Shown here: positions 3,393-22,338 of the stretch, one piece after another
How the letters are laid out: each line of letters begins with the position of its first letter
Numbering within the stretch: position 1 is the first letter of the stretch
Source: Octopus sinensis
Lineage: Eukaryota
Length of the DNA: 22,885 bases
NCBI RefSeq assembly: GCF_006345805.1
Contig: NW_021836630.1
Span: 1-22,885, forward strand
Direction of reading: 5' to 3'
Notes under the pieces: model-generated
Databases searched by the model: none
What the model was told of the DNA's origin: nothing
The model's input: the letters and a program-made list of their open reading frames with translations, nothing else
Program-made: the position numbers and the translations under genes

Positions 3393-3619
3393 TATTTCTT
3401 TACTACCCACAAGGGGCTAAAAACAGAGGAGACAAACAAGGACAGACACATGGATTAAGTCGATTACATCGACCCCCAGCGTAACTGGTACGTATTTAAT
3501 CGACCCCGAAAGGACGAAAGGCAAAGTCGACCTCGGCGGAATTTGAACTCAGAACGTAACAGCAGACGAAATACGGCTACGCATTTCGCCCGGCATGCTA
3601 ACGTTTCTGCCAGCTCGCC
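3393..3619 (-). mobile_element. tRNA-derived SINE family B, monomer
   Basis: Minus strand GGCGAGCTGGCAGAAACGTTAGC...GAGTTCAAATTCC...GCCTTTCGTCCTTTCGGGGTCGATTAAATACGTACCAG. Perfect 15-bp TSD CCCTGAAAATATACC (3378-3392 / 3618-3632, overlapping the 5' end). The central block resembles the Meta-domain type of SINE core (recalled, not searched). Confidence 0.92.
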
Positions 3620-3695
3620 CTGAAAATATACCATATTAACTTTAAGGTCTGATGAGAACGGTTGTGGGCCAACTGTTTTATTAAATAAATGATTA

Positions 3696-4860: not shown

Positions 4861-5060
4861 GCAGGGGAGTGGGCAACATCCTTTCTATGAGAGGAGATGC
4901 TAACCTTCCTGCGCATGCGTAAAGATTTTCAAGTCGGTAGGAAGCGCCATCTCCTGGTTGTTATGCCTAGAGTACAGACGTGTAGTGCGCGCTCGTCGTG
5001 AAAATTTCCACATATGCAGAGCAATTTTGTCCAAGTCGGATACTATTTGAACACACCTTG

Positions 5061-5520
5061 TATGTATGTATGTATGTATGTATGTATGTATGTATGTATG
5101 TATGTATGTATGTATGTGTGTATGTATGTATGTATGTATGTATGTATGTATGTATTTATGTTTGTATGTATATATGTAAGTATGTATGTATGTATGTATG
5201 TATGTGTATGTATGTATGTATGTATGTATGTATGTGCATTTGTATGTATGAATGTATGAATGTTTGTATGTATGTATGTATGTATGAATGTTTGTATGTA
5301 TGTATGCATGCATGTATGTATGTATTATGCATGCATGTATGTGTGTATGCATGCATGCATGTATGTATGTATTATGCATGCATGTATGTATGTATGCATG
5401 CATGCATGTATGTATGTATGTATGTATGCATGTATGTATGCATGTATGTATGTATGTATGTATGTATGCATGTATGTATGTATGCATGTATGTATGCATG
5501 TATGTATGCATGTATGTATG

Positions 5521-5554
<34 letters not shown>

Positions 5555-5623
5555 TGTATGTATGTATGTATGTATGCATGCATGCATGCATGCATGTATG
5601 TATGTATGTATGTATGTATGTAT
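5061..5623. repeat. ~560-bp (TATG)n array with CATG, AATG and TGTG variants
   Basis: Read directly; explains the MYVC/HTYI pseudo-ORFs. Confidence 0.98.
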
Positions 5624-6256
5624 CGCACAGATCTTTGGAAATGATTTCGAGAGAAAACAATACGTTTCATTTAACAGGGAAGTTAAGAAAACATTGTAAT
5701 TCATAAGCATAACTTGCTACACATCTCCATACAATCAACAAAATATTTATTAAAATAACAACAACAACAACAGTGTGACCAGCTAAATAAAAAAGCAAAA
5801 ACACCCCGTGCCTCCTCCGCAAATTCAGCTGAAGACAATTGATAAGGAACAACAGTGGAGGCTGTTTAACGCGAGAGTTTTAATTACTACAAGCTATTAA
5901 TATACACAGAGCCAAAGATATGAATATTAGAAATGAGCGACAAGATTCATATCTCGTGTGAAAGTGAACCACAAAACCTCTCTTAAACTTACAACTCATT
6001 TAGCTGCAGTTTAATGTAATTATCGGCGAAAATTGGGGGACTGAACCTCATGTTAACGCTAATTAATATGCGAAAGCCAAAGCTCCCAAAACTAAAAAGT
6101 GAAAAACAAAAAACAAAAAAAAAAGAAGTAAGAAAGAAAAAAATGAAAGTAAGAAAATGAAAAATACTTCTTTAATGAGCTACTGATACCCAGATATAGA
6201 TGGCGAGAGATGATGAGATCATGAAAATAATCTCGCGCAGTCGGCTATCTATACGT

Positions 6257-6257
<1 letters not shown>

Positions 6258-6313
<56 letters not shown>

Positions 6314-6486
6314 TATGTGTGTGTGCCTGTCTGTATGCACGTATGCATGTATGCATCCGTATATATATATATATATATATATGCATACATATAAACATAT
6401 ATATATACATATATATTTATACATATATATATACATATATATATATGTATGTATATGTATGTATATATATATATGTGTGTGTGTAT
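6258..6486. repeat. (GT)n / (TA)n compound microsatellite
   Basis: Read directly from the sequence. Confidence 0.95.
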
Positions 6487-6487
6487 A

Positions 6488-6670
6488 GGGGGAGAATTCA
6501 CGAAAAAAACAAAAGACGAAGACAGGTGGTGTACAATACAAACAGATGTATTAGTATAACGCTCAGGAATTGAAAAAGTCTTTTACGTTTCGAGCCTACG
6601 CTCTTCTACAGAAAGGGAGATAGAAAAAACAAGGAGAGAAATAAATGTGTGTAGTGGCTAACGATCTATC
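6488..6670 (-). mobile_element. Microsatellite-embedded ~180-bp element with a minimal hammerhead-like core (6578-6617)
   Basis: Minus strand CTTT-CTGTAGA-A-GAGC-GTAG-GCTC-GAAA-CGTA-AAAG. The core has a substitution (CUGUAGA rather than CUGANGA). Flanks resemble 21066-21282. Confidence 0.6.
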
Positions 6671-6912
6671 ATGGCGATATAGATAGATAGATACATACAT
6701 ATTTCTTTTTTATTTGTTTCAGTCATTACTGCGATATGTGTGTGTGTAAGTATATGTATATTACATACACACATACTTATGTGAATAAAACAAAATTCAA
6801 AATCGAAAAACTTTACACCGTCACCGCCAGCAAAACGAAAAGAAATCTTCAAAAACAATAAGTCAAAGATAATATTATGAAACGGCTTCAGTGAGCCTAA
6901 AGATTAAAGCAA

Positions 6913-7689: not shown

Positions 7690-8075
<386 letters not shown>

Positions 8076-8882: not shown

Positions 8883-9273
8883 TATATTTACATATATTTT
8901 CATTACACGTCCCACATTCCTCTTGCTTTTACATCACATTCACGCCTGCTTCCACTTTTTTACTTCAGCACATTCTACCCACACACTAAAAGATAGCACA
9001 AACCAACACCCCCAAACGCCAGCTAATATAAGTACTACACTTCCGTACATGCACGTCTCTACAACGCATACACGCACACCAAAACTACACACTCACAGCA
9101 CTTCTTCCTTATGCATATGTCAAAACACAGATACATGTCTAAACGTGTACGCACACATACTACAGTCTTTCCTCCTTTATAACTCCCCTATAGAATTGCG
9201 TCCCCACCCTATCGTGCATTTTCTTCCTCAGTCACTTTTTCTCTTTTACCCGCTACCTTTACTTCTAGACTTT

Positions 9274-9310
9274 TCTTCTGATGAAGGACTAGCGTCCGAA
9301 ACGTTACCTC
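9274..9310 (+). ncRNA. Minimal type I hammerhead ribozyme core candidate
   Basis: CTGATGA (9278-9284)-A-GGAC-TAGC-GTCC-GAAA (9298-9301)-CGTT; palindromic AACGTT at stem III; stem I is weak. Confidence 0.65.
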
Positions 9311-9651
9311 TCTTTCCCTTATTTTTTTAAGCCTTACACTAATACAATATTACTTAAAACGTGTACCTTTTTTCTGCTCCGCTAAATTATTCACCTATAT
9401 TTAATATTTGCATATTTTTCATCATAAAGTTCAAGAAAGAACTGACAAAGAAGGCCTCACATCAAACTCCCTGGTGAGACGGGAATTTTCAAAGGATTTT
9501 GTCGATGGTATCATTCCCATATGACCCGCAGTGATTAAACTTTAAGGATATAATACCACAGGCTTTTCCCGCGTTCTTTAGCATAAACTATCGCTATTAA
9601 CAGAGTCTGTGATTTAACAAAATAATACCAGGTCAGAATCATGAACAATTA

Positions 9652-9812
9652 GGGCGTAGCAGTGGCTGTGTGGTAAGTAGCTTGCTTACGAACCACATGG
9701 TACCGGGTTCAGTCCCACTGCGTGGCACCTTAGGCAAGTGTCTTCTACTTTAGTCTCGGGCCGACCAAAGCCTTGTGAGTGGATTTGGTAGACGGAAACA
9801 TGTGTGTGTGTG

Positions 9813-10560: not shown

Positions 10561-10951
10561 GTATTTCTTTATATATAGGGGACAAACAAGGACAGACAAA
10601 CGGATTAAGTCGATTACATTGACCCCAGTGCGTAACTGGTACTTAATTTATCGACTCCGAAAGGATTAAAGGCAAAGTCAACCTCGGCGGAATTTGAACT
10701 CAGAACGTAGCGGCAGATGAAATACCTATTTCTTTACTACCCACAAGGGGACAAACACAGAGAGGACAAACAAGGATAGACAATCGGATTAAGTCAGTTA
10801 TATCGACCCCAGTGCGTAACTGGTACTTATTTAATCGACCCCGAAAAGATGAAAGGCAAAGTCGACCTCGGCAGAATTTGAACTCAGAACGTAGCGGCAG
10901 ACGAAATACTGCAAAGCATTTCGCCCGGCGTGCTAACGATTCTGCAAGCTC
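10561..10951 (-). mobile_element. SINE family B dimer (one head plus two bodies)
   Basis: Junction GAAATAC|CTATTTC at 10725/10726; 10-bp TSD GACGTAATAT (10551-10560 / 10952-10961). Confidence 0.92.
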
Positions 10952-11094
10952 GACGTAATATATTTTTATGAAATCGTTACTGCTTTTCGTCATACGTTAA
11001 ACGATAGTGTTTGAATATATGTGCCTATGCGAGTATCTCTCTATATATATAAACGGCAAAATATCTGTCTGTGTAACCTTTTAGATCTGACGTT

Positions 11095-13071: not shown

Positions 13072-13106
13072 GTTTTCGTTCAGCATACGCTCTCATATCA
13101 GGTCAC
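13072..13106 (-). other. Degenerate hammerhead-like motif in a TA-flanked island (12964-13128)
   Basis: Minus strand CTGATATGAGAGCGTATGCTGAACGAAAAC resembles the 6578-6617 motif (GAGCGTAGGCTCGAAACGTAAAAG) but the core is disrupted. Confidence 0.35.
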
Positions 13107-14568: not shown

Positions 14569-14981
14569 CTATTTCTTTACTACCCACAAGGGGCTAAACA
14601 TAGAGGGGTCAAAGACAGACACACGGATTAAGTCCATTATATCGACCCCAGTGCGGAACTGGTACTTATTTAATCGACCCCGAAAGGATGAAAGGCAAAG
14701 TCGACCTCGGCGGAATTTGAACACACAACGTAACGGCAGACGAAATACATATTTCTTTACTACCCACAAGGGGCTAAACACAGAGGGGACAAACAAGGAC
14801 AGACAAACGGATTAAGTCGATTATATCGACCCCAGTGCGTAACTGGTACTTATTTAATCGACCCCGAAAGGATGAAAGGCAAAGTCGACCTCAGCGGAAT
14901 TTGAACTCAGAACGTAGCGGCAGACGAAATACTGCTAAGTATTTCGAACCGGCGTGCTAACGATTCTGCCAGCTCGCCGCC
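14569..14981 (-). mobile_element. SINE family B dimer
   Basis: Junction GAAATAC|ATATTTC at 14748/14749; TSD CAATTTCGATAT (14557-14568) / CATTTTCGATAT (14986-14997). Confidence 0.92.
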
Positions 14982-15691
14982 TTTGCATTTTCGATATGAT
15001 TTCGTTGCTGCATTTGCCATTTCCTCTTCGATGCCAAAGTATTGTGAGATAAAATCTAATTCTTAGAATACGTTAAATTACTAGTTACCAAACATTTTAT
15101 TACGGAACACTCATATAGTTATTCAAATACCGTGGAACCCATATCTGTATCTTTTACGGTCAGTTCTTGCCACCATCAAAGAGATTAAACGAAGCTAAAA
15201 TTACTTTAGTAAGAGCATTATTCATATAAAAAGTATATACTTTTTTAAATTGGAGAATACGATCTCTTTTAGTATATACCACAGTTTCAGTAATTGGTTT
15301 AGGTACCCATGTAAACGCAAGCAGACATTAAAAACTCAGACTTGCCACCCTTCACTGAGCGAAAGAACTACGTTGTGCTAGTTGGAGGGGTGATGGAATG
15401 TTTATAAAACAACTTTTTATTAAATTCTATTAAAATAAGTTTTTATTAAATTTTATTTAAAGACGTTTTATCTTGCGAAGGTTTCGAACGTGCGATGGGC
15501 ACCTTCGGTTGTGTACTATTTCTTCAACGGGATTTTAATTTATATTAGTGTCTATTGTCATGGTACTAATGCTATGACAACTGACTATTGTACCATCTTG
15601 CGAAATATATATTTAGCAATGCAAGCAATCATTCGTGTCCAAGGACAGACTTTAATGCTTACCCCGGGCTTTGGAACTGCGAGCGATATAA

Positions 15692-16085
15692 ATCATCATC
15701 ATTGTTCGACCGCGGTCGAGACAATGGAATTTACTATGTTACGCCAGACTTCAACGGTCCATCATAGCATTACGGAGGTCCTGTTGCTGGATGCCTGTAT
15801 CCCTGGAGATTACATCAGGGTAGGAGAGTGTGCGCCCTCTGTTATCGCGAGTAGATGGCTTCCAGAGGAGAAAGTAGTAGAAATTACCACCCTACCCTCG
15901 TTTTCAGCTCTACAACAATGTCCAGCAAACTGGACTCTTCTAAACCTTTCACAAGAGATGATACAGGTGGTAGTTTCCCATATATTTGTACTTTGGTTGG
16001 ATGACGCTTCCATGAGAGATTTTGAGCTCTCATAAGGAGGCGAGTGTAAGTTCCATCCAACCGCCTCTCAAAATTCACTATTCTC
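15692..16085 (-). mobile_element. RTE-clade LINE 3' end, 5'-truncated and frameshifted
   Basis: FERRLDGTYTRLLMRAQNLSWKRHPTKVQIYGKLPPVS..RRVQFAGHCCRAENE..LLWKPSTRDNRGRTLSYPDVISRDTGIQQQDLRNAMMDR; (GAT)n tail. Confidence 0.85.
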
Positions 16086-16549
16086 AAAATAAGTTGGAAT
16101 TTTTCATGTCACGTGTTATCCATAAGATAGTTACATTCTTAAAAATTGCATAATGGTTCCGCAACGAAATAATTTAAAGGAACCATTAGTCAGACATATT
16201 CCGAAACGATTATGATTACATATTTCTCACTGTGTAAACGGAGCTCTAAAGAACATGGCATACAAACATTTTATGAAAACTGATCGATCAAACTATGATC
16301 GAAGTCATGATATTTTTATTTTTATCCTTTGTGTATCTAATAACTACAATATCCGAAGTGTACTTACTTTTTTTTAAAGATTGTAGTGTGTAATCTGTGC
16401 GAAATTTGACTGCTGTTTCTAGCAGGTTGAGTGACCATTTAGGAGCTCGGATCTTTTCGGTTTGAACGTCAGTTTTTTCTAGCGGTGCCATATGAAATTG
16501 TCACCCATAATTATGACCCTAGTATCGATCTATTGCATTTCAATCTGTT

Positions 16550-16579
16550 TTAGGGTTAGGGTTAGGGTTAGGGTTAGGG
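16550..16579 (+). repeat. Interstitial telomeric repeat (TTAGGG)5
   Basis: Five perfect units followed by TT and a G run. Confidence 0.95.
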
Positions 16580-16726
16580 TTGGGGGGGGGTATCTTTTTT
16601 TCTTCAGAAATGTAAATAAACCCAATCTGTTTCTTAAACGAGGGACATATTCATACGGCACAGAATGTTTTTTACCTCAATACGCGTTAGTGATTGGTTG
16701 AAATTGAAGAAAAAAAACATCTTATA

Positions 16727-17128
16727 GGCGCAGGAGTGGCTGTGTGGTAAGTAGCTTGTTTACCAACCACATGGTTCCGGGTTCAATCCCACTGCGTGGC
16801 ACCTTGGGCAAGTGTCTTCTACTATAGCCTCGGGCCAACCAAAGCCTTGTGAGTGGATTTGGTAGACGGAAACTGAAAGAAGCCCGTCGTATATATATAT
16901 ATATATGCGTGTGTGTGTTTGTGTGTCTGTGTTTGTCCCCTAGCATTGCTTGACAACCGATGCTGGTGCGTTTATGTCCCCGTTACTTAGCGGTTCGGCA
17001 AAAGAGACCGATAGAATAAGTACTGGACTTACAAAAGAATAAGTCCCCGGGTCGAGTTGCTCGATTGAAGGCGGTGCTCCAGCATGGCCGCAGTCAAATG
17101 ACTGAAACAAGTAAAAGAGAGAAAGAGA
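16727..17128 (+). mobile_element. SINE family A, full length, nested in the TIR element
   Basis: GGCGCAGGAGTGGCTGTGTGG start, GGTTCAATCCC B box, complete tail; probable TSD AAACATCTTATA (16715-16726) / AAATATCTTACA (17128-17139). Confidence 0.93.
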
Positions 17129-17677
17129 AATATCTTACAAACTATAGAATTTTCTCAAGAAAGCCAAGAGAAAAAGATGTTTTATAAACACATTCTACCA
17201 GTATACGAAGTTTAAAATTTTTTAGTTACGTGGAAACTATTTTTAAAAACTGCCGTTCAAACCGAAAAGATCCAGGAGCCCTTTCATTGGTTTGCACAAT
17301 ATCATAGGATAGTGGAAAGTTGGAATTTGTAATGGATGTTTCGTTTATATTTTATTTTATCTTATTTATTTATTCCTTGACTTGAATTAGTGGAAAAAAG
17401 TAAATGAAACTGAACTTACTGCTGCAGTGAATTACACTCTACGCCATTAAAGATGTTTTTATCTAAGGAACACGTAAAATCTCAAATTTTTGAAATAGTT
17501 AGAAAAAAACAATTATTGCATTTTCATCTGCCACGGAGAGATCGTTTATGCTGTTTCTATCTTTAGGGTGTCTTTAAACAGTGGGATGTTTTTAAAAGTT
17601 TGCAATACAAGCGTCTGTTGTCATGGCAACATACTACGACAACTAACAGTTGCATCATCACGTTAAACTTCTTATAT

Positions 17678-17892
17678 TTAGTGTTGATATTCTTTATTGC
17701 CGTGCCCTGCGGTCATGACAGCGATGGCGTTGCTGCAGAAAATGGCCAGTGACACCCGCTGCAGCAACCATTCCACCTCGCAGGGGCCACAGTTATTCCT
17801 ATTTTGCGGAGGAAATCAGGAGTATGGGGTGTTAAAATACCTGACGTCTCGGCGGCGACCGGTACAAACTGATAGCAGCCCTTGTATTTATT
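17678..17892 (-). pseudogene. C-terminus of a CRE-like non-LTR retrotransposon (restriction-like endonuclease)
   Basis: NKYKGCYQFVPVAAETSGILTPHTPDFLRKIG, one frameshift, then EVEWLLQRVSLAIFCSNAIAVMTAGHGNKEYQH*. This matches the CRE-type pattern KY...F.P.A.ET.G......FL..L...WL.QR.S.AI..GNA. Confidence 0.75.
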
Positions 17893-18289
17893 GAATTTTC
17901 TCTCCTTAAAATTAGTGTTTCTGTTGAAAATAAGATTATTGGTGTTTCACTCAGACTTCGAACCTAAGTGCAACATACATGTTGTTGTAAGTCTACAGTA
18001 GACATCTGAGTTCCGATTGCTTACTCAGACTTGAAACCCTCATTAATATCTTTGGATGCCAAAAATTTTCTATCGCAAATCGAGTCGGTGAGGCTAGACC
18101 ATAGCACAACAAAAGACTAGACATCATCACAATCTTTCGGTTGAGAGAGAGCAAATCTCTCATCTGGGGTCCGACCTATAACGATACTTTCTTCAGCGTC
18201 AATCGGGTGAATTAGCTTGTTATCTGTGGTCCGAAAAACCACAGATGCCAAACAATATCTAGTTTAATTCATGCCACCCAAAACACCAA

Positions 18290-18606
18290 AATTTACCAAT
18301 GCTACATAAGGACCCCAAATTAATGAAAATTTTACACTCACATAAAATCATTAAAAGCCACAAACAACCGAAATCACTAAAAAAGATCGTCACAAAGGCA
18401 AAATTATTTTCTAAAATGACGGACGCAAAAATGAAAAAAAATGTGGTCGACCAAATTGCGCAAACCTTGTAGAAGGATCAGAATTTCTTTTCAAAGAGGG
18501 ACAAAAATTCAAAATCAAATCTGACTTTACTTGTGCCTCAGAAAACCTGATTTATGTTATAAGATGCTCGGGCTGCCACCAAAACTACATTGAGTCCACG
18601 GGATAA
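18290..18606 (+). pseudogene. Second PLE fragment: linker and GIY-YIG N-terminus
   Basis: NLPMLHKDPKLMKILHSHKIIKSHKQPKSLKKIVTKAKLFS, frameshift in an A-run, then KCGRPNCANLVEGSEFLFKEGQKFKIKSDFTCASENLIYVIRCSGCHQNYIESTG*. Confidence 0.88.
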
Positions 18607-18729
18607 TGTGTTTTTTACACTATTCTTCAATTCGTTTCGCAATCGGAATGACTGCCAAACGGCTCATTCGTCTGTGGTTTGAAACCCGGATGGTCATGTA
18701 ACAGTCATCCCGGCTTTCTTGTGCTGTTT

Positions 18730-19263
18730 TTATGAGTTTTTAGTCCTTTTTATGTCTCTTTCAAATACAGTTTTCACAGGGGAGGTTGGTATAATCTTTC
18801 TTTTCGCCGTCATCCAAACCTCCCCTTTATTGTTGCTTTCTGGTGTTGTCTTGTAGCTTTCTGTTGTAGCTTTATTGCCTTCTGGTGTTGACGCTCCTTT
18901 CTCAGGTCCCTTCGCTGCCTCCTCCTCCTCCTCCTCGTTGGATTCTTCTCGAGGCGGATTACACTCAGCTCGGATATGTCCCTTTTTACCACAACCGAAA
19001 CAACGAGGTTTTTGCCCTTCGACTACTACGACGAGTCGGGCCTCCACCACCTCCGGGATCTCTTCCAAGGTCAGGGGCTCAGTTTGAATTGTTATTTTAA
19101 TGCTTTGCCCCTGCCAGTATTGTTCTTTCATTGCAATTGCCTCCAGTATTCATATAAGTTGTTATTCTGTAGTATTTTAAGATATTTTTGCCAATAGAGA
19201 AAGAGCCGCTTTCTAATCGAGATCCAACGCTCCTCCATTGGAATTTCAACATTAACAGCAGGG

Positions 19264-19612: not shown

Positions 19613-19837
19613 TATTTCTTTACTACCTACAAGGGGCTAAACACAGAGGGGACAAACAAGAACAGACAAATGGATTAAGTCGATTATATCGACCCCAGTG
19701 TGTAACTGGTACTTATTTAATCGACGCCGAAAGGATGAAAGGCAAAGTCGACCTCGGCGGAATTTGAACTCAGAACGTAACGACAGACGAAATACCGCTA
19801 AGCATTTCTTCCATCGGGCTAACGATTCTGCCAGCTC
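19613..19837 (-). mobile_element. SINE family B monomer in CT-rich sequence
   Basis: Body matches the other B copies; head slightly diverged. Confidence 0.9.
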
Positions 19838-20139
19838 TCTTCCTCTTTCTTCCTCTCACCTCTCTCTCTCACTCTTCATCCCTCTCTCTTCCTCCCACTC
19901 TCTTCCTCTCTCTCTCTTTCTCTCGCTGGGTAACCATGTACTTCCTCTATAGCCACACACCTGTTTCTACCTCTCTATTTCTCTGTCACTCTCTAAACTT
20001 TCATCATTTGACCCCAGATCATTTCTTCCAATGACCTCTCCGTTATAGCAAGACACCTGTTTCCACATCTTGGTCCCTTTGTCACTTGCTAACCTTTCAT
20101 CCTCTGACACAAGTCCCCCTCCTCAAATGCTCCTGCCCC

Positions 20140-20439: not shown

Positions 20440-20840
20440 CTCTTTACTCTTTTACTCTTTTACTTGTTTCAGTCATTTGACTGCGGTCATGCTGGAACAC
20501 CGCCTTTAGTCGAGCAAATCGACCCCGGGACTTATTCTTTGTAAGCCCAGTAATTATTCTATCGGTCTCTTTTGCCGAACCGCTAAGTGACGGGGACGTA
20601 AACACACCTGCATCGGTGCTAGGGGGACAAACACAGACACACAAACACACACACACATATATATATATATACATATATACGACAGGCTTCTTTCAGTTTC
20701 CGTCTACCAAATCCACTCACAAGGCATTGGTCGGCCCGGGGCCATAGCAGAAGACACTTGCCCAAGATGCCACGCAGTGGGACTGAACCCGGAACCATGT
20801 GGTTGGTTAGCAAGCTACTTACCACACAGCCACTCCTGCG

Positions 20841-20842
<2 letters not shown>
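20440..20842 (-). mobile_element. SINE family A, full length
   Basis: Reverse complement of the 16727-17128 copy; (AGAGTAAA)n tail; internal TA/CA tract. Confidence 0.93.
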
Positions 20843-20886
<44 letters not shown>

Positions 20887-20982
20887 TATAATAATATAAT
20901 ATATATATATAATATATAAATATAACATATACTATATACTATACGACGTACCTACCGTACATACATTACACGCATATATGAG

Positions 20983-21065
<83 letters not shown>

Positions 21066-21067
<2 letters not shown>

Positions 21068-21282
21068 TCAAATGTGACCGCCCGCGTGTGTATCGTTGGC
21101 GATTTTTTCCCTCCGTCATCCCTTCCTTGGATCTTTCCTTTTCCTGTTTCTGACGAAGAGCTCCGCTCGAAACGTTAAATCTCCTTCTTTCTTTCCCTTT
21201 CCTAAGCGTCCAGTAACACTATACTTGTCCCACGTCCTCGCGTTGTTGTGTTTTCTCTTTGTGTTTTCATGTTTGAATTAAC
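21066..21282 (+). mobile_element. ~215-bp island between (TA)n tracts carrying a minimal hammerhead core (21146-21180)
   Basis: GTTT-CTGACGA (21150-21156)-A-GAGC-TCC-GCTC-GAAA (21169-21172)-CGTT-AAAT; (TA)n at ~20985-21062 and 21283-21348. Confidence 0.7.
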
Positions 21283-21297
21283 TATATATATATAGAT

Positions 21298-21350
<53 letters not shown>

Positions 21351-21740
21351 CTACCTCTGTGCGTGTGTGTTCCGGAACTCTACTTGTTTGGTAGGGACTT
21401 GTTTTTAGATCATTTAGTGAAAGTTAACTATCACTCAGTTTTTATTGGCCTATAAAAACTAACCAGCAGCCTACAATCACAATGAAAGAAAGAATATATC
21501 GAATAATCATAAGACTGCCCGATCAGGATTGATCTAGGGTTACAGAGCGGCCACAATAGTAAGAACAACCGCATCTATCCCGGTTCACTTTACCTACAGA
21601 AATAAGTAATTAAGTTTCCCTCAAACTATACTGTGTAAACAAAAGACAGGATGATCAAGGTTGGAGAGGCTTTGATCATAGATCCCCTCGATCAGAACTG
21701 ACCTGCTGTCAAACAACAACGACTACGGACTACTTTATAT

Positions 21741-22338
21741 ATTTCTTTATTGCCCACAAGGAGCTAAACACAAAGGGGACAAGCAAGGACAGACATAGGT
21801 ATTAGGTCGATTACATCCACCCCGGTGCGTAACTGGTACTTAATTTATCGATCCCGAAAGGATGAAAGGCAAAGTCGACATCGGCGGAATTTGAACTCAG
21901 AACGAAATAGCAGACGGAATACCTATTTCTTTACTATCCACAAGGGGCTAAACATAGAGGGGCAAACAAGGATAGACAAACGGATTAAGTCGATTACATC
22001 GACCCCGGTGCGTAAGTGGTACTTAATTTATCGACCCCGAAAGGATGAAAGGCAAAGTCGACCTCGGCGGAATTTGAACTCAGAACATAACGGCAGACGA
22101 AATACCTATTTCTTTATTACTCACAAGGGGCTAAACACAGAGGGGACAAACAAGGACAGACATAGGTATTAAGTCGATTACATCGACCCCAGTGCGTAAC
22201 TGGTACTTAATTTATCGACCCCGAAAGGATGAAAGGCAAAGTCGACCTGGGCGGAATTTGAACTCAGTACGTAACGGCAGACGAAATACGGCTAAGCATT
22301 TCGCCCCGGCGTGCTAACGGTTCTGCCAGCTCGCCGCC
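21741..22338 (-). mobile_element. SINE family B trimer (one head plus three bodies)
   Basis: Junctions after 21922 and 22105 (both G(G/A)AATAC|CTATTTC); head at 22290-22338; 17-bp TSD CTACGGACTACTTTATA (21723-21739) / CTACGAACTACTTTATA (22341-22357). Confidence 0.93.

What the first reader, a model, noticed from the sequence alone, without database searches (positions are those of the whole stretch)
21066..21282. Microsatellite-embedded mini-elements carrying minimal hammerhead ribozymes (retrozyme-like or PLE-derived)
Seen: this island sits between two long (TA)n tracts and contains CUGACGA-A-[GAGC/UCC/GCUC]-GAAA-CGUU with a short stem I (GUUU/AAAU). Related cores occur at 9278-9305 (+), 6578-6617 (-) and, degenerate, 13072-13106 (-). 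Stem II differs between copies but stays paired (GAGC/GCUC versus GGAC/GUCC), which looks like covariation. The flanks also share blocks: ATCGTT(A/G)GC upstream, and CT(G/A)AGCGT..A(C/T)ACTA(A)TAC ~25-35 nt downstream. Known: Penelope-like elements carry minimal type I hammerheads with a tiny palindromic stem III (here ACGU/AACGUU) proposed to act as dimers, and non-autonomous hammerhead retrozymes exist in animals. Inference: this is a non-coding, self-cleaving mobile RNA family that favours TA microsatellites and may be mobilised by the PLEs whose remnants are in this window. I cannot tell whether it has been described in this taxon.
Basis: partly seen in the sequence, partly recalled or inferred. 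Interest (0 to 1): 0.8.

Follow-up and report, generated by a model that had tools for sequence, protein, structure and literature searches.

The report
Hammerhead-bearing Penelope-type mini-retroelements in TA repeats
The island is a real but old, decayed copy of a roughly 220-base non-coding repeat that carries the minimal hammerhead ribozyme typical of Penelope-like retrotransposons and sits inside a TA microsatellite; this is a new, octopus-type example of something already well described in other animals.

Summary
The observation mostly holds. The window has three copies of one diverged repeat family: A 21063-21282 (+), B ~9190-9395 (+) and C 6488-6677 (-). Each carries CUGANGA-A-[4-bp stem II]-GAAA-CGU. 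A strict descriptor finds 2 sites against 0.06 expected by chance. A covariance model built only from unrelated external hammerheads scores A, B and C at E 7e-11 to 2e-7 and nothing else. The fourth proposed copy (13072-13106) is not supported.

[quoted passage not shown] The repeats in the window point to an octopus genome. Five more family copies lie in 62 kb of Octopus bimaculoides. They show compensatory stem II changes, TA flanks, 5' truncation and a head-to-head pair, all PLE-style insertion marks.

No PLE reading frame adjoins any copy, and no tandem array is present in the window. Only A has an intact core plus helix I.

Best reading: dead copies of a short PLE-dependent element inserted into (TA)n. 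It is a new member of a known kind, of modest interest.

The parts
20843..21062 (.). (TA)n microsatellite abutting the 5' end of copy A; the presumed insertion target
   Evidence: TRF, period 2, 111 copies; sequence
21063..21282 (+). Copy A of the ~220-bp element. It starts at CACATTCAAATGTGACC and ends at TTTGAATTAAC. It is the only copy in the window with an intact core plus helices I and II.
   Evidence: Family profile E 2e-38. It shares its 5' start with copy E5 of O. bimaculoides. Sequence.
21146..21180 (+). Minimal type I hammerhead of copy A. Helix I 5' strand GUUU is at 21146-21149, the core CUGACGA at 21150-21156 and the bulge A at 21157. Helix II GAGC/UCC/GCUC spans 21158-21168 and GAAA spans 21169-21172. 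The palindrome ACGU is at 21172-21175 and U17 at 21176, with predicted cleavage after it. Helix I 3' strand AAAU is at 21177-21180.
   Evidence: Descriptor hit; covariance model R1, 40.1 bits, E 7e-11; pair counts
21283..21349 (.). (TA)n microsatellite abutting the 3' end of copy A
   Evidence: TRF, period 2, 34 copies
9190..9395 (+). Copy B. The 5' limit is uncertain. The 3' end runs into a degenerate TA-rich stretch (TATATTTAATATTT).
   Evidence: blastn to A, 148 nt, E 3e-4; family profile E 5e-36; sequence
9278..9305 (+). Hammerhead of copy B: CUGAUGA-A-GGAC/UAGC/GUCC-GAAA-CGU-U. The core and helix II are intact. Helix I is reduced to 1 bp (UCUU against ACCU).
   Evidence: R1 35.9 bits, E 1.5e-9
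6488..6677 (-). Copy C, of subfamily 2. It is flanked by (TATC/TATG)n on its 5' side and (CA)n(TA)n on its 3' side.
   Evidence: Family profile E 4e-40; sequence. Its closest relatives are E5 and E3 in O. bimaculoides.
6580..6615 (-). Hammerhead of copy C: CUUU-CUGUAGA-A-GAGC/GUAG/GCUC-GAAA-CGU-A-AAAG. Helices I and II and the ACGU palindrome are intact. The core carries A6 to U, a change at a conserved core position, so activity is probably lost.
   Evidence: Descriptor with 1 mismatch. R1 29.6 bits, E 1.7e-7, although it does not match the pattern used to collect the model's training set.
13072..13106 (-). Proposed 'degenerate' fourth core. Rejected as a family member.
   Evidence: No profile hit; no R1 hit at E<=10
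18415..18603 (+). Tentative GIY-YIG-like trace (CGRPNCANL...NLIYVIRCSGCHQNYIE). It is the only PLE-like coding remnant seen and is not linked to any hammerhead copy.
   Evidence: Motif scan. No GIY-YIG match in Pfam. 7 of 18 identity to the EN of a real PLE, pairwise E 0.02. No homologue found.

Best explanation
The island and its two relatives are old, dead insertions of a short (~190-230 bp), non-coding, pyrimidine-rich retroelement.

Its centre is a Penelope-type minimal type I hammerhead: CUGANGA, one bulged A, a 4-bp helix II, GAAA, then ACGU with no loop 3. ACGU cannot fold back on itself. Helix III can therefore form only between two copies of the motif, so the ribozyme would act as a dimer, either on a multimeric transcript or on two RNAs. 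This dimer mechanism is inferred from published work on this class, not shown here.

The element has no reading frame. It was most likely copied in trans by the RT and GIY-YIG endonuclease of autonomous Penelope-like elements. Those enzymes nick AT-rich or (TA)n DNA and prime reverse transcription from the nick.

This mechanism accounts for four features seen here:
- TA repeats directly at both ends of copies.
- 5'-truncated copies.
- A head-to-head inverted pair.
- A common 3' end (TTTGAAYT...).

I favour a dedicated unit with a discrete 5' end about 85 nt upstream of the core, meaning a pLTR-like or SINE-like PLE derivative. The alternative is a random stump of a full-length PLE.

The genomic copies have since decayed neutrally. 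Only copy A still has the sequence needed for cleavage.
For: The family is real.
- There are three copies in the window and five in 62 kb of Octopus bimaculoides.
- The link to octopus comes from the window's repeat ORFs hitting O. bimaculoides proteins.

The hammerhead class is right.
- All four features that Cervera and de la Pena (PMC4209133) list as emerging beyond their search descriptor are present: an extra base between positions 9 and 10.1, a G10.1-C11.1 pair, a palindromic 15.2-16.2, and covariation within the family.
- On the 7 octopus copies, helix II is paired in 96% of cells, with two positions changed on both sides (A-U to G-C twice, G-C to A-U once). ACGU pairs in 100% of cells. 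Slid controls give 17-41% paired.
- A pattern that left the two inner stem II pairs free found at least 120 loci in metagenomes. In 121 of 127 matches both free pairs are complementary, against 14% expected by chance.
- On 38 distinct external examples the covariation score is 0.518 against 0.18 in shuffles (0 of 500 shuffles reach it), and helix I covaries at all 6 pairs.
- The covariance model built from those external sequences alone recovers A, B and C in the window and F, H and E5 in octopus, and nothing else significant. C, F, H and E5 do not match the pattern used to collect the training set.

The PLE link.
- One external locus, L118, is a genuine PLE. It has RVT_1 at E 1.6e-12, the motifs DVVSLFTKVP, GASMGSPLSP and RYVDDVF, and a GIY-YIG frame. 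It carries this same hammerhead architecture about 100 nt after the stop codon.
- Published work reports hammerheads near PLE 3' ends, (TA)n as a preferred target, inverted 5'-truncated partners and 30-40-bp tails (PMC8557442). It also reports PLE cleavage of both DNA strands and cleavage at AT-rich DNA (PMC11167929).

The TA association.
- A random point has (TA)>=5 within 12 nt with probability 0.046.
- The 3' ends of A, F and E3 and the 5' ends of A, E3 and E5 abut TA directly. E3 is 5'-truncated, which argues that the TA is the target rather than part of the element.

The 5' end looks discrete.
- A starts at -87 and E5 at -84 relative to the core. F's homology to A starts at about the same point, -83, and is preceded by 28 further nt.
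- No copy runs into coding sequence.
Against: - No autonomous PLE that shares sequence with these units was found. No RT or EN remnant lies next to any of the 8 copies. The partner is therefore inferred only from the ribozyme type and the insertion marks.
- Only 8 copies could be examined. The 5' ends of B, C, H and I differ, which random 5' truncation would also produce.
- Only 2 of 7 cores are intact. F and H read CCGACGA (U4 to C) and I reads CCUACGA, also with U4 to C. C and E5 read CUGU(A/U)GA (A6 to U). These changes are shared within subgroups, so some source copies may already have carried an altered core while still spreading. That would weaken any claim that cleavage is needed for mobility. 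Consistent with this, hammerhead mutants did not affect insertion by a purified PLE in vitro (PMC11167929).
- Helix I is only 3-4 weak pairs.
- Rfam's hammerhead models do not score the motif at all.
- Octopus DNA is rich in microsatellites, and the TA statistics rest on about 6 loci.
Confidence: 0.55

Rival explanations
1. The islands are ordinary, heavily 5'-truncated 3' ends of an autonomous Penelope-like element. Each is the last ~200 nt of the 3' untranslated region or pLTR, including its hammerhead. They are not a separate non-autonomous family.
For: Cervera and de la Pena state that most min-HHRs occur as single motifs 'probably related to truncated PLEs'. In the L118 PLE the hammerhead lies about 100 nt after the ORF stop, so short stumps would look like this. 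The 5' ends vary among B, C, H, I and E3. PLEs are abundant in octopus genomes, with 30 recently active Penelope families reported in O. vulgaris (PMC13282606).
Against: None of the 8 copies extends into EN-coding sequence. A and E5 start within 3 nt of each other, right next to the TA. Homology between F and A also begins at about that same point.
Confidence: 0.3
2. They are animal non-LTR retrozymes. These are tandem units transcribed into multimers, cut by the hammerhead, ligated into small circular RNAs and reverse-transcribed from the circle.
For: One O. bimaculoides locus is circularly permuted: 3' part, then (AT)12, then 5' part with the hammerhead. Both breakpoints fall at the same CCCGAGC, as expected from one turn round a circular or tandem template. 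The unit size of ~220 nt is within the published 170-400 nt range (PMC7229834). A 2026 preprint argues that animal retrozymes derive from PLE pLTRs.
Against: The window has no tandem array of the unit, and all three window copies are solitary. Retrozymes carry canonical type I hammerheads with a helix III and loop; this motif has none. The permuted copy's breakpoints are 20-30 nt away from the cleavage site, and it is a single case.
Confidence: 0.1
3. The hammerhead resemblance is incidental. This is an unrelated SINE or low-complexity repeat that happens to contain CUGANGA...GAAA.
For: Rfam gives no hammerhead hit. Most cores are mutated. The flanks are low-complexity CT-rich sequence. Octopus genomes hold hundreds of unclassified SINE families.
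Against: Chance expectation is 0.06 sites against 2 observed. Helix II shows compensatory changes. The bulge, the G10.1-C11.1 pair and the ACGU palindrome were not part of my descriptor, yet all are present in every copy. An externally trained covariance model finds exactly these sites. ARAGORN finds no tRNA-like head.
Confidence: 0.03

Closest known systems
Minimal hammerheads (min-HHRs) of metazoan Penelope-like elements (Cervera and de la Pena 2014, PMC4209133)
   Same: The catalytic boxes match, as do the bulged base after A9, the G10.1-C11.1 pair and the short helix I. There is no loop 3 and the 15.2-16.2 positions are palindromic, so a dimer is required. Sequence variability within one genome is high. 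Most copies are solitary.
   Different: Helix II here is 4 bp with a 3-4-nt loop, as in canonical hammerheads, not the 6-8 bp reported for Schistosoma or Drosophila PLEs. No adjoining PLE body was found. The host is an octopus, for which I found no specific report.
Neptune- and Naiad-type PLE insertions into (TA)n (Arkhipova 2006; Craig et al. 2021, PMC8557442)
   Same: TA microsatellites flank both sides and no target duplication is discernible. The family also shows 5' truncation, head-to-head inverted partners and a possible 28-nt extra 'tail' on copy F.
   Different: These units have no RT or EN reading frame. Naiads lack canonical hammerheads, so if the partner is TA-targeting it would be Neptune-like. 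This is inferred, not shown.
Animal non-LTR retrozymes and the SINE-like Sm-alpha elements of Schistosoma (PMC7229834; bioRxiv 10.64898/2026.07.22.740005)
   Same: All are short, non-coding, hammerhead-bearing units that depend on another element's RT. All are proposed PLE derivatives.
   Different: Retrozymes are defined by tandem arrays, canonical type I hammerheads and circular RNAs. Here the copies are dispersed single units with a loop-less minimal motif, embedded in microsatellites.
Rfam Hammerhead_1 (RF00163) and related hammerhead families
   Same: The catalytic core and the helix I and helix II layout are the same.
   Different: The motif does not reach even E 10 against any Rfam hammerhead model, because helix III and loop 3 are absent.

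Membership tests
PLE-type minimal type I hammerhead (min-HHR) | Catalytic boxes CUGANGA and GAAA in type I order | tested here: met
   Exact in A (21150-21172) and B (9278-9301). C has CUGUAGA. The majority consensus of the 7 octopus copies is CUGANGA.
PLE-type minimal type I hammerhead (min-HHR) | Helix II closed by a G10.1-C11.1 pair and supported by covariation | tested here: met
   96% of cells paired. G-C at 10.1/11.1 in 6 of 7 copies and G-U in 1. Two pairs carry compensatory double changes. External set: 96.7% paired.
PLE-type minimal type I hammerhead (min-HHR) | One unpaired nucleotide between A9 and G10.1 | tested here: met
   An A in all 7 copies. The feature is listed in PMC4209133.
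PLE-type minimal type I hammerhead (min-HHR) | No loop 3, with a palindromic 15.1-16.1 segment (ACGU) that can pair only between two copies | tested here: met
   ACGU in 6 of 7 copies and AUGU (a CpG-to-TpG change) in 1, so 100% standard pairs.
PLE-type minimal type I hammerhead (min-HHR) | Helix I of about 4-5 bp flanking the core and the cleavage site | tested here: inconclusive
   4 bp in A (GUUU/AAAU) and in C (CUUU/AAAG), but 1 bp in B. 68% of cells are paired over the 7 copies.
PLE-type minimal type I hammerhead (min-HHR) | Mg2+-dependent self-cleavage, as a dimer | not testable with these tools
   Needs in vitro transcription. Published min-HHRs cleave poorly in vitro. MFE cofolding was uninformative.
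Penelope-like element (autonomous) | Single ORF with a telomerase-like RT and a GIY-YIG endonuclease | tested here: not met
   No RVT or GIY-YIG match in Pfam over 15000-19250. tblastn with the L118 PLE RT and EN gives nothing in the window or L121. Motif scans find only one GIY-like trace.
Penelope-like element (insertion signature) | AT-rich or (TA)n target, 5' truncation, inverted head-to-head partners, partial tandems | tested here: met
   TA directly flanks A, E3, E5 and F, against a background of 0.046. E3, H and I are truncated copies. H and I form an inverted pair. E3-(AT)12-E5 is a permuted or partial tandem. The sample is small.
Animal non-LTR retrozyme | Head-to-tail tandem repeats of a 150-450-bp unit | tested here: not met
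   TRF finds no array containing the unit in the window. The three copies are 2.5-12 kb apart and one is on the opposite strand.
Animal non-LTR retrozyme | Canonical type I hammerhead with helix III plus loop 3 | tested here: not met
   ACGU is followed directly by H17 with no loop. No Rfam hammerhead hit.
Animal non-LTR retrozyme | Expression as small circular RNAs | not testable with these tools
   No transcriptome data were available.
Rfam Hammerhead_1 / HH9 / HH10 / type II / type III | Score at or above the family's gathering threshold | tested here: not met
   0 matches at the gathering threshold. No hammerhead family reaches E<=10 on 21100-21240.
tRNA- or 5S-derived SINE | A pol III-type tRNA-like or 5S-like head | tested here: not met
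   ARAGORN finds no tRNA-like sequence in the window, and no Rfam tRNA or 5S hit overlaps the units.

The most novel reading that the evidence does not exclude
Octopus genomes may hold a very large family of discrete ~220-nt PLE-dependent units that spread as single copies into TA microsatellites. A rough extrapolation from 5 copies in 62 kb of unselected O. bimaculoides DNA gives on the order of 1e5 copies. These units would be copied from tandem or circular RNA templates, as the one circularly permuted copy (3' part-(AT)12-5' part, both breakpoints at CCCGAGC) hints. Subfamilies with altered cores (U4 to C, A6 to U) would have kept spreading. That would mean the hammerhead fold or sequence serves as a recognition or priming signal for the PLE enzyme rather than as a nuclease.
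Probability: 0.15. Interest if true: 0.55.

Novelty: new member of a known kind. Interest (0 to 1): 0.3.

Why it matters
The finding adds a cephalopod example to the known link between minimal hammerheads, Penelope-like elements and TA microsatellites. It also suggests that part of the 'unclassified SINE' or unknown repeat fraction of octopus genomes is PLE-derived.

The modest wider value lies in two leads.

First, some subgroups share the same altered-core change. If those changes predate the insertions, the result bears on the open question of what PLE hammerheads are for.

Second, one copy is circularly permuted. That is the kind of product a circular or more-than-unit-length template would give.

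Practically, the case shows that Rfam-based annotation misses this whole class of ribozyme motif.

Tried and rejected
- Rfam cmscan on the whole window, at gathering and at E<=10, and on 141 nt around the core gave no hammerhead. The many 'microRNA' hits are microsatellite artefacts.
- Pfam on six-frame translations of 15000-19250 found nothing.
- Protein homology searches with the GIY-YIG-like fragment and with the CCHC gag-like ORF both came back empty. Two exact-product look-ups were not on record.
- I first guessed a decapod crustacean from the repeats. The only protein hits were to Octopus bimaculoides, so I dropped that guess.
- MFE folding and cofolding of the cores predict the helix II hairpin in A, C and F. 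Otherwise they give trivial symmetric duplexes and say nothing about the hammerhead fold.
- A search for the U3-A8 core variant and for longer stems or loops added nothing in the window.
- The family profile against 120 metagenome loci matched only the ribozyme segment, so none is a member of the octopus family.
- The fourth copy at 13072-13106 was rejected.
- A covariance-model hit at 18177-18203 (-), E 0.02, has only CUGAAGAA between a short stem and lacks helix II and GAAA. I treat it as chance.

Full report
**What is in the sequence**

The stretch 21063-21282 lies exactly between two TA arrays, 20843-21062 and 21283-21349. On the + strand its centre reads as follows:
- GUUU at 21146-21149.
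- CUGACGA at 21150-21156.
- A at 21157.
- GAGC-UCC-GCUC at 21158-21168.
- GAAA at 21169-21172.
- C, G and U at 21173-21175.
- U at 21176.
- AAAU at 21177-21180.

In hammerhead numbering this gives, in order, helix I (5' strand), C3-A9, one bulged base, helix II, G12-A15.1, C15.2, G16.2, U16.1, H17 and helix I (3' strand). No loop 3 exists. A15.1-C15.2-G16.2-U16.1 is the self-complementary ACGU.

**Is it more than chance?**

CTGANGA-N6-30-GAAAC occurs twice in the window (9278 and 21150, both +) against 0.21 expected. My own descriptor also demands a paired helix II of at least 3 bp. It finds the same two sites against 0.06 expected, and 0 of 200 dinucleotide-preserving shuffles reach two. Allowing one core mismatch adds 6588-6611 (-), where the core is CUGUAGA.

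All three sites also share features the descriptor did not ask for: a bulged A, a G10.1-C11.1 pair and CGU after GAAA.

The flanks are homologous too. A~B match over 148 nt at 65% (E 3e-4) and A~C over 57 nt at 75% (E 1e-4).

The fourth, 'degenerate' site at 13072-13106 is not supported. The family profile finds nothing there even when only that stretch is searched, and the hammerhead covariance model does not report it at E<=10.

**Which genome, and more copies**

Protein searches with a GIY-YIG-like fragment and with a gag-like ORF found nothing. A search with the ORF-like translation of the window's abundant 184-bp repeat hit uncharacterised proteins of Octopus bimaculoides. So the window is from an octopus or a close relative, not a crustacean as I first guessed.

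One hit gave 76 kb (62 kb without N) of O. bimaculoides chromosome CM046612.1 as locus L121. A profile built from the family found five more copies there:
- F, about 21540-21770 (-), a full-length relative of A.
- E5, 74706-74840 (+), and E3, 74599-74680 (+), both relatives of C.
- H, 16140-16309 (+), and I, 15945-16120 (-).

Two subfamilies are visible, A/F and C/E, with B nearer the second.

The density is about one copy per 10 kb in DNA that was not chosen for hammerheads. If that density is typical, it suggests on the order of 1e5 copies per genome. This is a rough inference.

**Is the motif a hammerhead of a known class?**

Rfam says no. There is no hammerhead family at gathering score, nor at E<=10 on 141 nt around the core. 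This is expected for a motif without helix III.

Cervera and de la Pena 2014 (PMC4209133) defined this very architecture as the 'min-HHR' of Penelope-like elements (PLEs). They list four features that emerged beyond their search descriptor:
- Families full of covariation.
- An extra base between positions 9 and 10.1.
- A G10.1-C11.1 pair.
- Palindromic 15.2-16.2 positions.

All four are met here.

On the seven octopus copies helix II is paired in 96% of cells. Two positions are changed on both sides: GAGC/GCUC, GGGC/GCCC and GGAC/GUCC. The ACGU palindrome is kept in 100% of cells and helix I in 68%. Slid-partner controls give 17-41%.

As an independent test I scanned public metagenome contigs for CTGANGAAGNNCN{3,4}GNNCGAAACGT, leaving the two inner helix II pairs free. 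At least 120 loci matched, mostly host DNA in what look like coral-associated samples. In 121 of 127 matches both free pairs are complementary, against 14% by chance, with more than ten different pair combinations.

On 38 distinct examples all six helix I pairs and both free helix II pairs covary. The covariation score is 0.518 against 0.18 in shuffles, and 0 of 500 shuffles reach it.

A covariance model built from these external sequences alone gives the following scores:
- Window: A at 40.1 bits (E 7e-11), B at 35.9 bits (E 1.5e-9) and C at 29.6 bits (E 1.7e-7), with nothing else significant.
- L121: F at 30.7 bits, H at 28.3 bits and E5 at 22.5 bits.

A and B fit the collecting pattern, so their scores are partly circular. 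C, F, H and E5 do not fit it. E-values from this shortened calibration are rough.

**Link to Penelope-like elements**

One external locus, L118, is a genuine PLE. It has an RVT_1 ORF at E 1.6e-12 with the motifs DVVSLFTKVP, GASMGSPLSP and RYVDDVF. A GIY-YIG frame follows (VVYEIPCMDCSMVYIGET...). About 100 nt after the stop lies GUCAA-CUGAUGA-A-GACC/UACG/GGUC-GAAA-CGU-U-UUGAC.

The literature adds the following:
- Hammerheads lie in the pLTRs, near PLE 3' ends.
- (TA)n is a preferred target of Neptune and Naiad PLEs.
- Insertions show 5' truncation, adjacent inverted 5'-truncated copies, partial tandems and 30-40-bp tails (PMC8557442).
- A purified PLE cleaves both DNA strands at AT-rich sites and starts reverse transcription internally. 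Its hammerhead is protein-assisted and dispensable for insertion in vitro (PMC11167929).
- Penelope elements are abundant in octopus genomes (PMC13282606 and PMC8967140).

**Do the octopus copies show those insertion marks?**

Yes, within a small sample.
- A pure (TA)>=5 tract lies within 12 nt of a random point with probability 0.046. It directly abuts the 3' ends of A, F and E3 and the 5' ends of A, E3 and E5.
- C is flanked by TATC/TATG and CA/TA repeats. B ends in a degenerate TA stretch. H ends at an assembly gap followed by TA.
- E3 is a 5'-truncated copy, yet TA still sits directly at its truncated end. This argues that TA is the target, not part of the element.
- H and I are two 5'-truncated copies joined head to head, the inverted-pair arrangement described for PLEs.
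- All complete 3' ends share a TTTGAAYT-like terminus.

**What kind of unit?**

No copy adjoins a PLE reading frame. Pfam on the six frames of 15000-19250 finds nothing. tblastn with the L118 RT and EN finds nothing in the window or L121. Motif scans find only one GIY-like stretch, at 18415-18603. Pfam does not recognise that stretch as GIY-YIG, and it matches the L118 endonuclease at 7 of 18 residues.

The 5' ends of A (-87 relative to the core) and E5 (-84) coincide and abut TA. F's homology to A starts at about the same point (-83) and is preceded by 28 further nt that could be a PLE 'tail'. C starts at -66. H, I and E3 are shorter.

I therefore favour a dedicated unit of about 220 bp, pLTR-like or SINE-like, mobilised in trans (0.55). 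Plain truncated stumps of a full PLE come second (0.30). The broader statement, that this is a PLE-type hammerhead element inserted by PLE machinery, I put at about 0.85.

**Not a retrozyme by definition**

Animal retrozymes are head-to-tail arrays of 150-450-bp units with canonical type I hammerheads, expressed as circular RNAs (PMC7229834). The window has no such array, and the motif lacks loop 3.

A 2026 preprint argues that retrozymes are PLE pLTR derivatives, so the two categories are related. One octopus locus hints at a tandem or circular template. E3-(AT)12-E5 is one unit circularly permuted, with both breakpoints at the same CCCGAGC. This is a single case, and the chance of such a coincidence is roughly 5% (my estimate).

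**Function**

Only A and B keep CUGANGA, and only A also keeps helix I. C and E5 share A6 to U. F, H and I share U4 to C. H also has G12 to A, and I has G5 to U plus a damaged helix II.

With copies 65-75% identical to one another, roughly 2 of 7 intact cores is about what neutral decay predicts. However, the shared changes suggest that some source copies may already have carried altered cores. If so, cleavage was not required for spread, in line with the in vitro PLE result.

Solitary genomic copies cannot form the dimeric helix III by themselves. Self-cleavage of this locus is therefore unlikely in practice and is untested.

**Verdict**

It belongs to a kind described since 2014. It is a new member (octopus, TA-embedded, 4-bp helix II) rather than a new kind.

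Noticed in passing
L121 74581-74840 (O. bimaculoides): A circularly permuted copy of the element. The order is (TA)9, the 3' part starting at ATTCCCGAGCGT, (AT)12, then the 5' part with the hammerhead ending at TTTTCCCGAGC. Both breakpoints fall on the same CCCGAGC, as if one turn of a circular or tandem template had been copied.
   Followed up: partly
L121 15945-16309: Two 5'-truncated copies of the element are joined head to head in inverted orientation. Both have degenerate hammerheads (CCUACGA and CCGACGA...AAAACGU). This is the arrangement described for PLE insertions.
   Followed up: partly
window 14570-14932, 21740-22289; also 3459-3620, 10698-10955, 19641-19949: A 184-bp unit occurs in short tandem arrays (2-3 copies) and as dispersed copies. 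Its ORF-like translation (…STPVRNWYL.NRPRKDERQSRPRRNLNSE…) matches 'uncharacterized proteins' annotated in Octopus bimaculoides. This is probably repeat DNA mis-annotated as genes, and it is what revealed the likely host.
   Followed up: partly
window 9613-9750, 16744-16982, 20560-20842: Several copies of another dispersed repeat, whose translations read …SGCVVSSLLTNHMVPGSVPLRGTLGKCLLL… and …FDCGHAGAPP…. One copy abuts the large TA array upstream of copy A, so TA tracts here border more than one repeat family.
   Followed up: no
window 16550-16585: An interstitial (TTAGGG)6 telomere-type repeat.
   Followed up: no
window 18730-19131 (-): A 133-aa ORF with a CCHC zinc knuckle (CFGCGKKGHIRAEC) and an acidic tract, resembling a gag-like retroelement remnant. 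Pfam zf-CCHC scores only E 0.016, and no homologue was found in the protein database.
   Followed up: partly
window 18415-18603 (+): A GIY-YIG-like stretch preceded by a CX4CxxL motif (CGRPNCANL…NLIYVIRCSGCHQNYIE). It is possibly a decayed Neptune-type PLE endonuclease fragment. The evidence is weak, and no hammerhead lies next to it.
   Followed up: partly
L121 71187-71218 (-): A different hammerhead-like motif: CUGAUGA-A-GGCUGG/8-nt loop/UCAGCC-GAAA-UGC, with a 5-bp helix I (GACAC/GUGUU). It lies between microsatellites. It is not a member of this family, scores only 11 bits on the model, and the site expected to be H17 is unclear.
   Followed up: no
window 5050-5625, 6260-6480, 7790-8030 and other microsatellites: Dozens of sub-threshold Rfam 'microRNA' matches (mir-297, mir-3149, mir-466 and others) fall on TGTA, TA and TG microsatellites. 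They are artefacts of repeat hairpins, not genes.
   Followed up: yes
L001, L030, L032, L078, L083, L087 (metagenome contigs): In the external, probably cnidarian, loci the same minimal hammerhead often occurs as two copies in opposite orientation only about 10-40 nt apart. This matches the 'dual motifs on opposite strands' noted in the 2014 paper.
   Followed up: no
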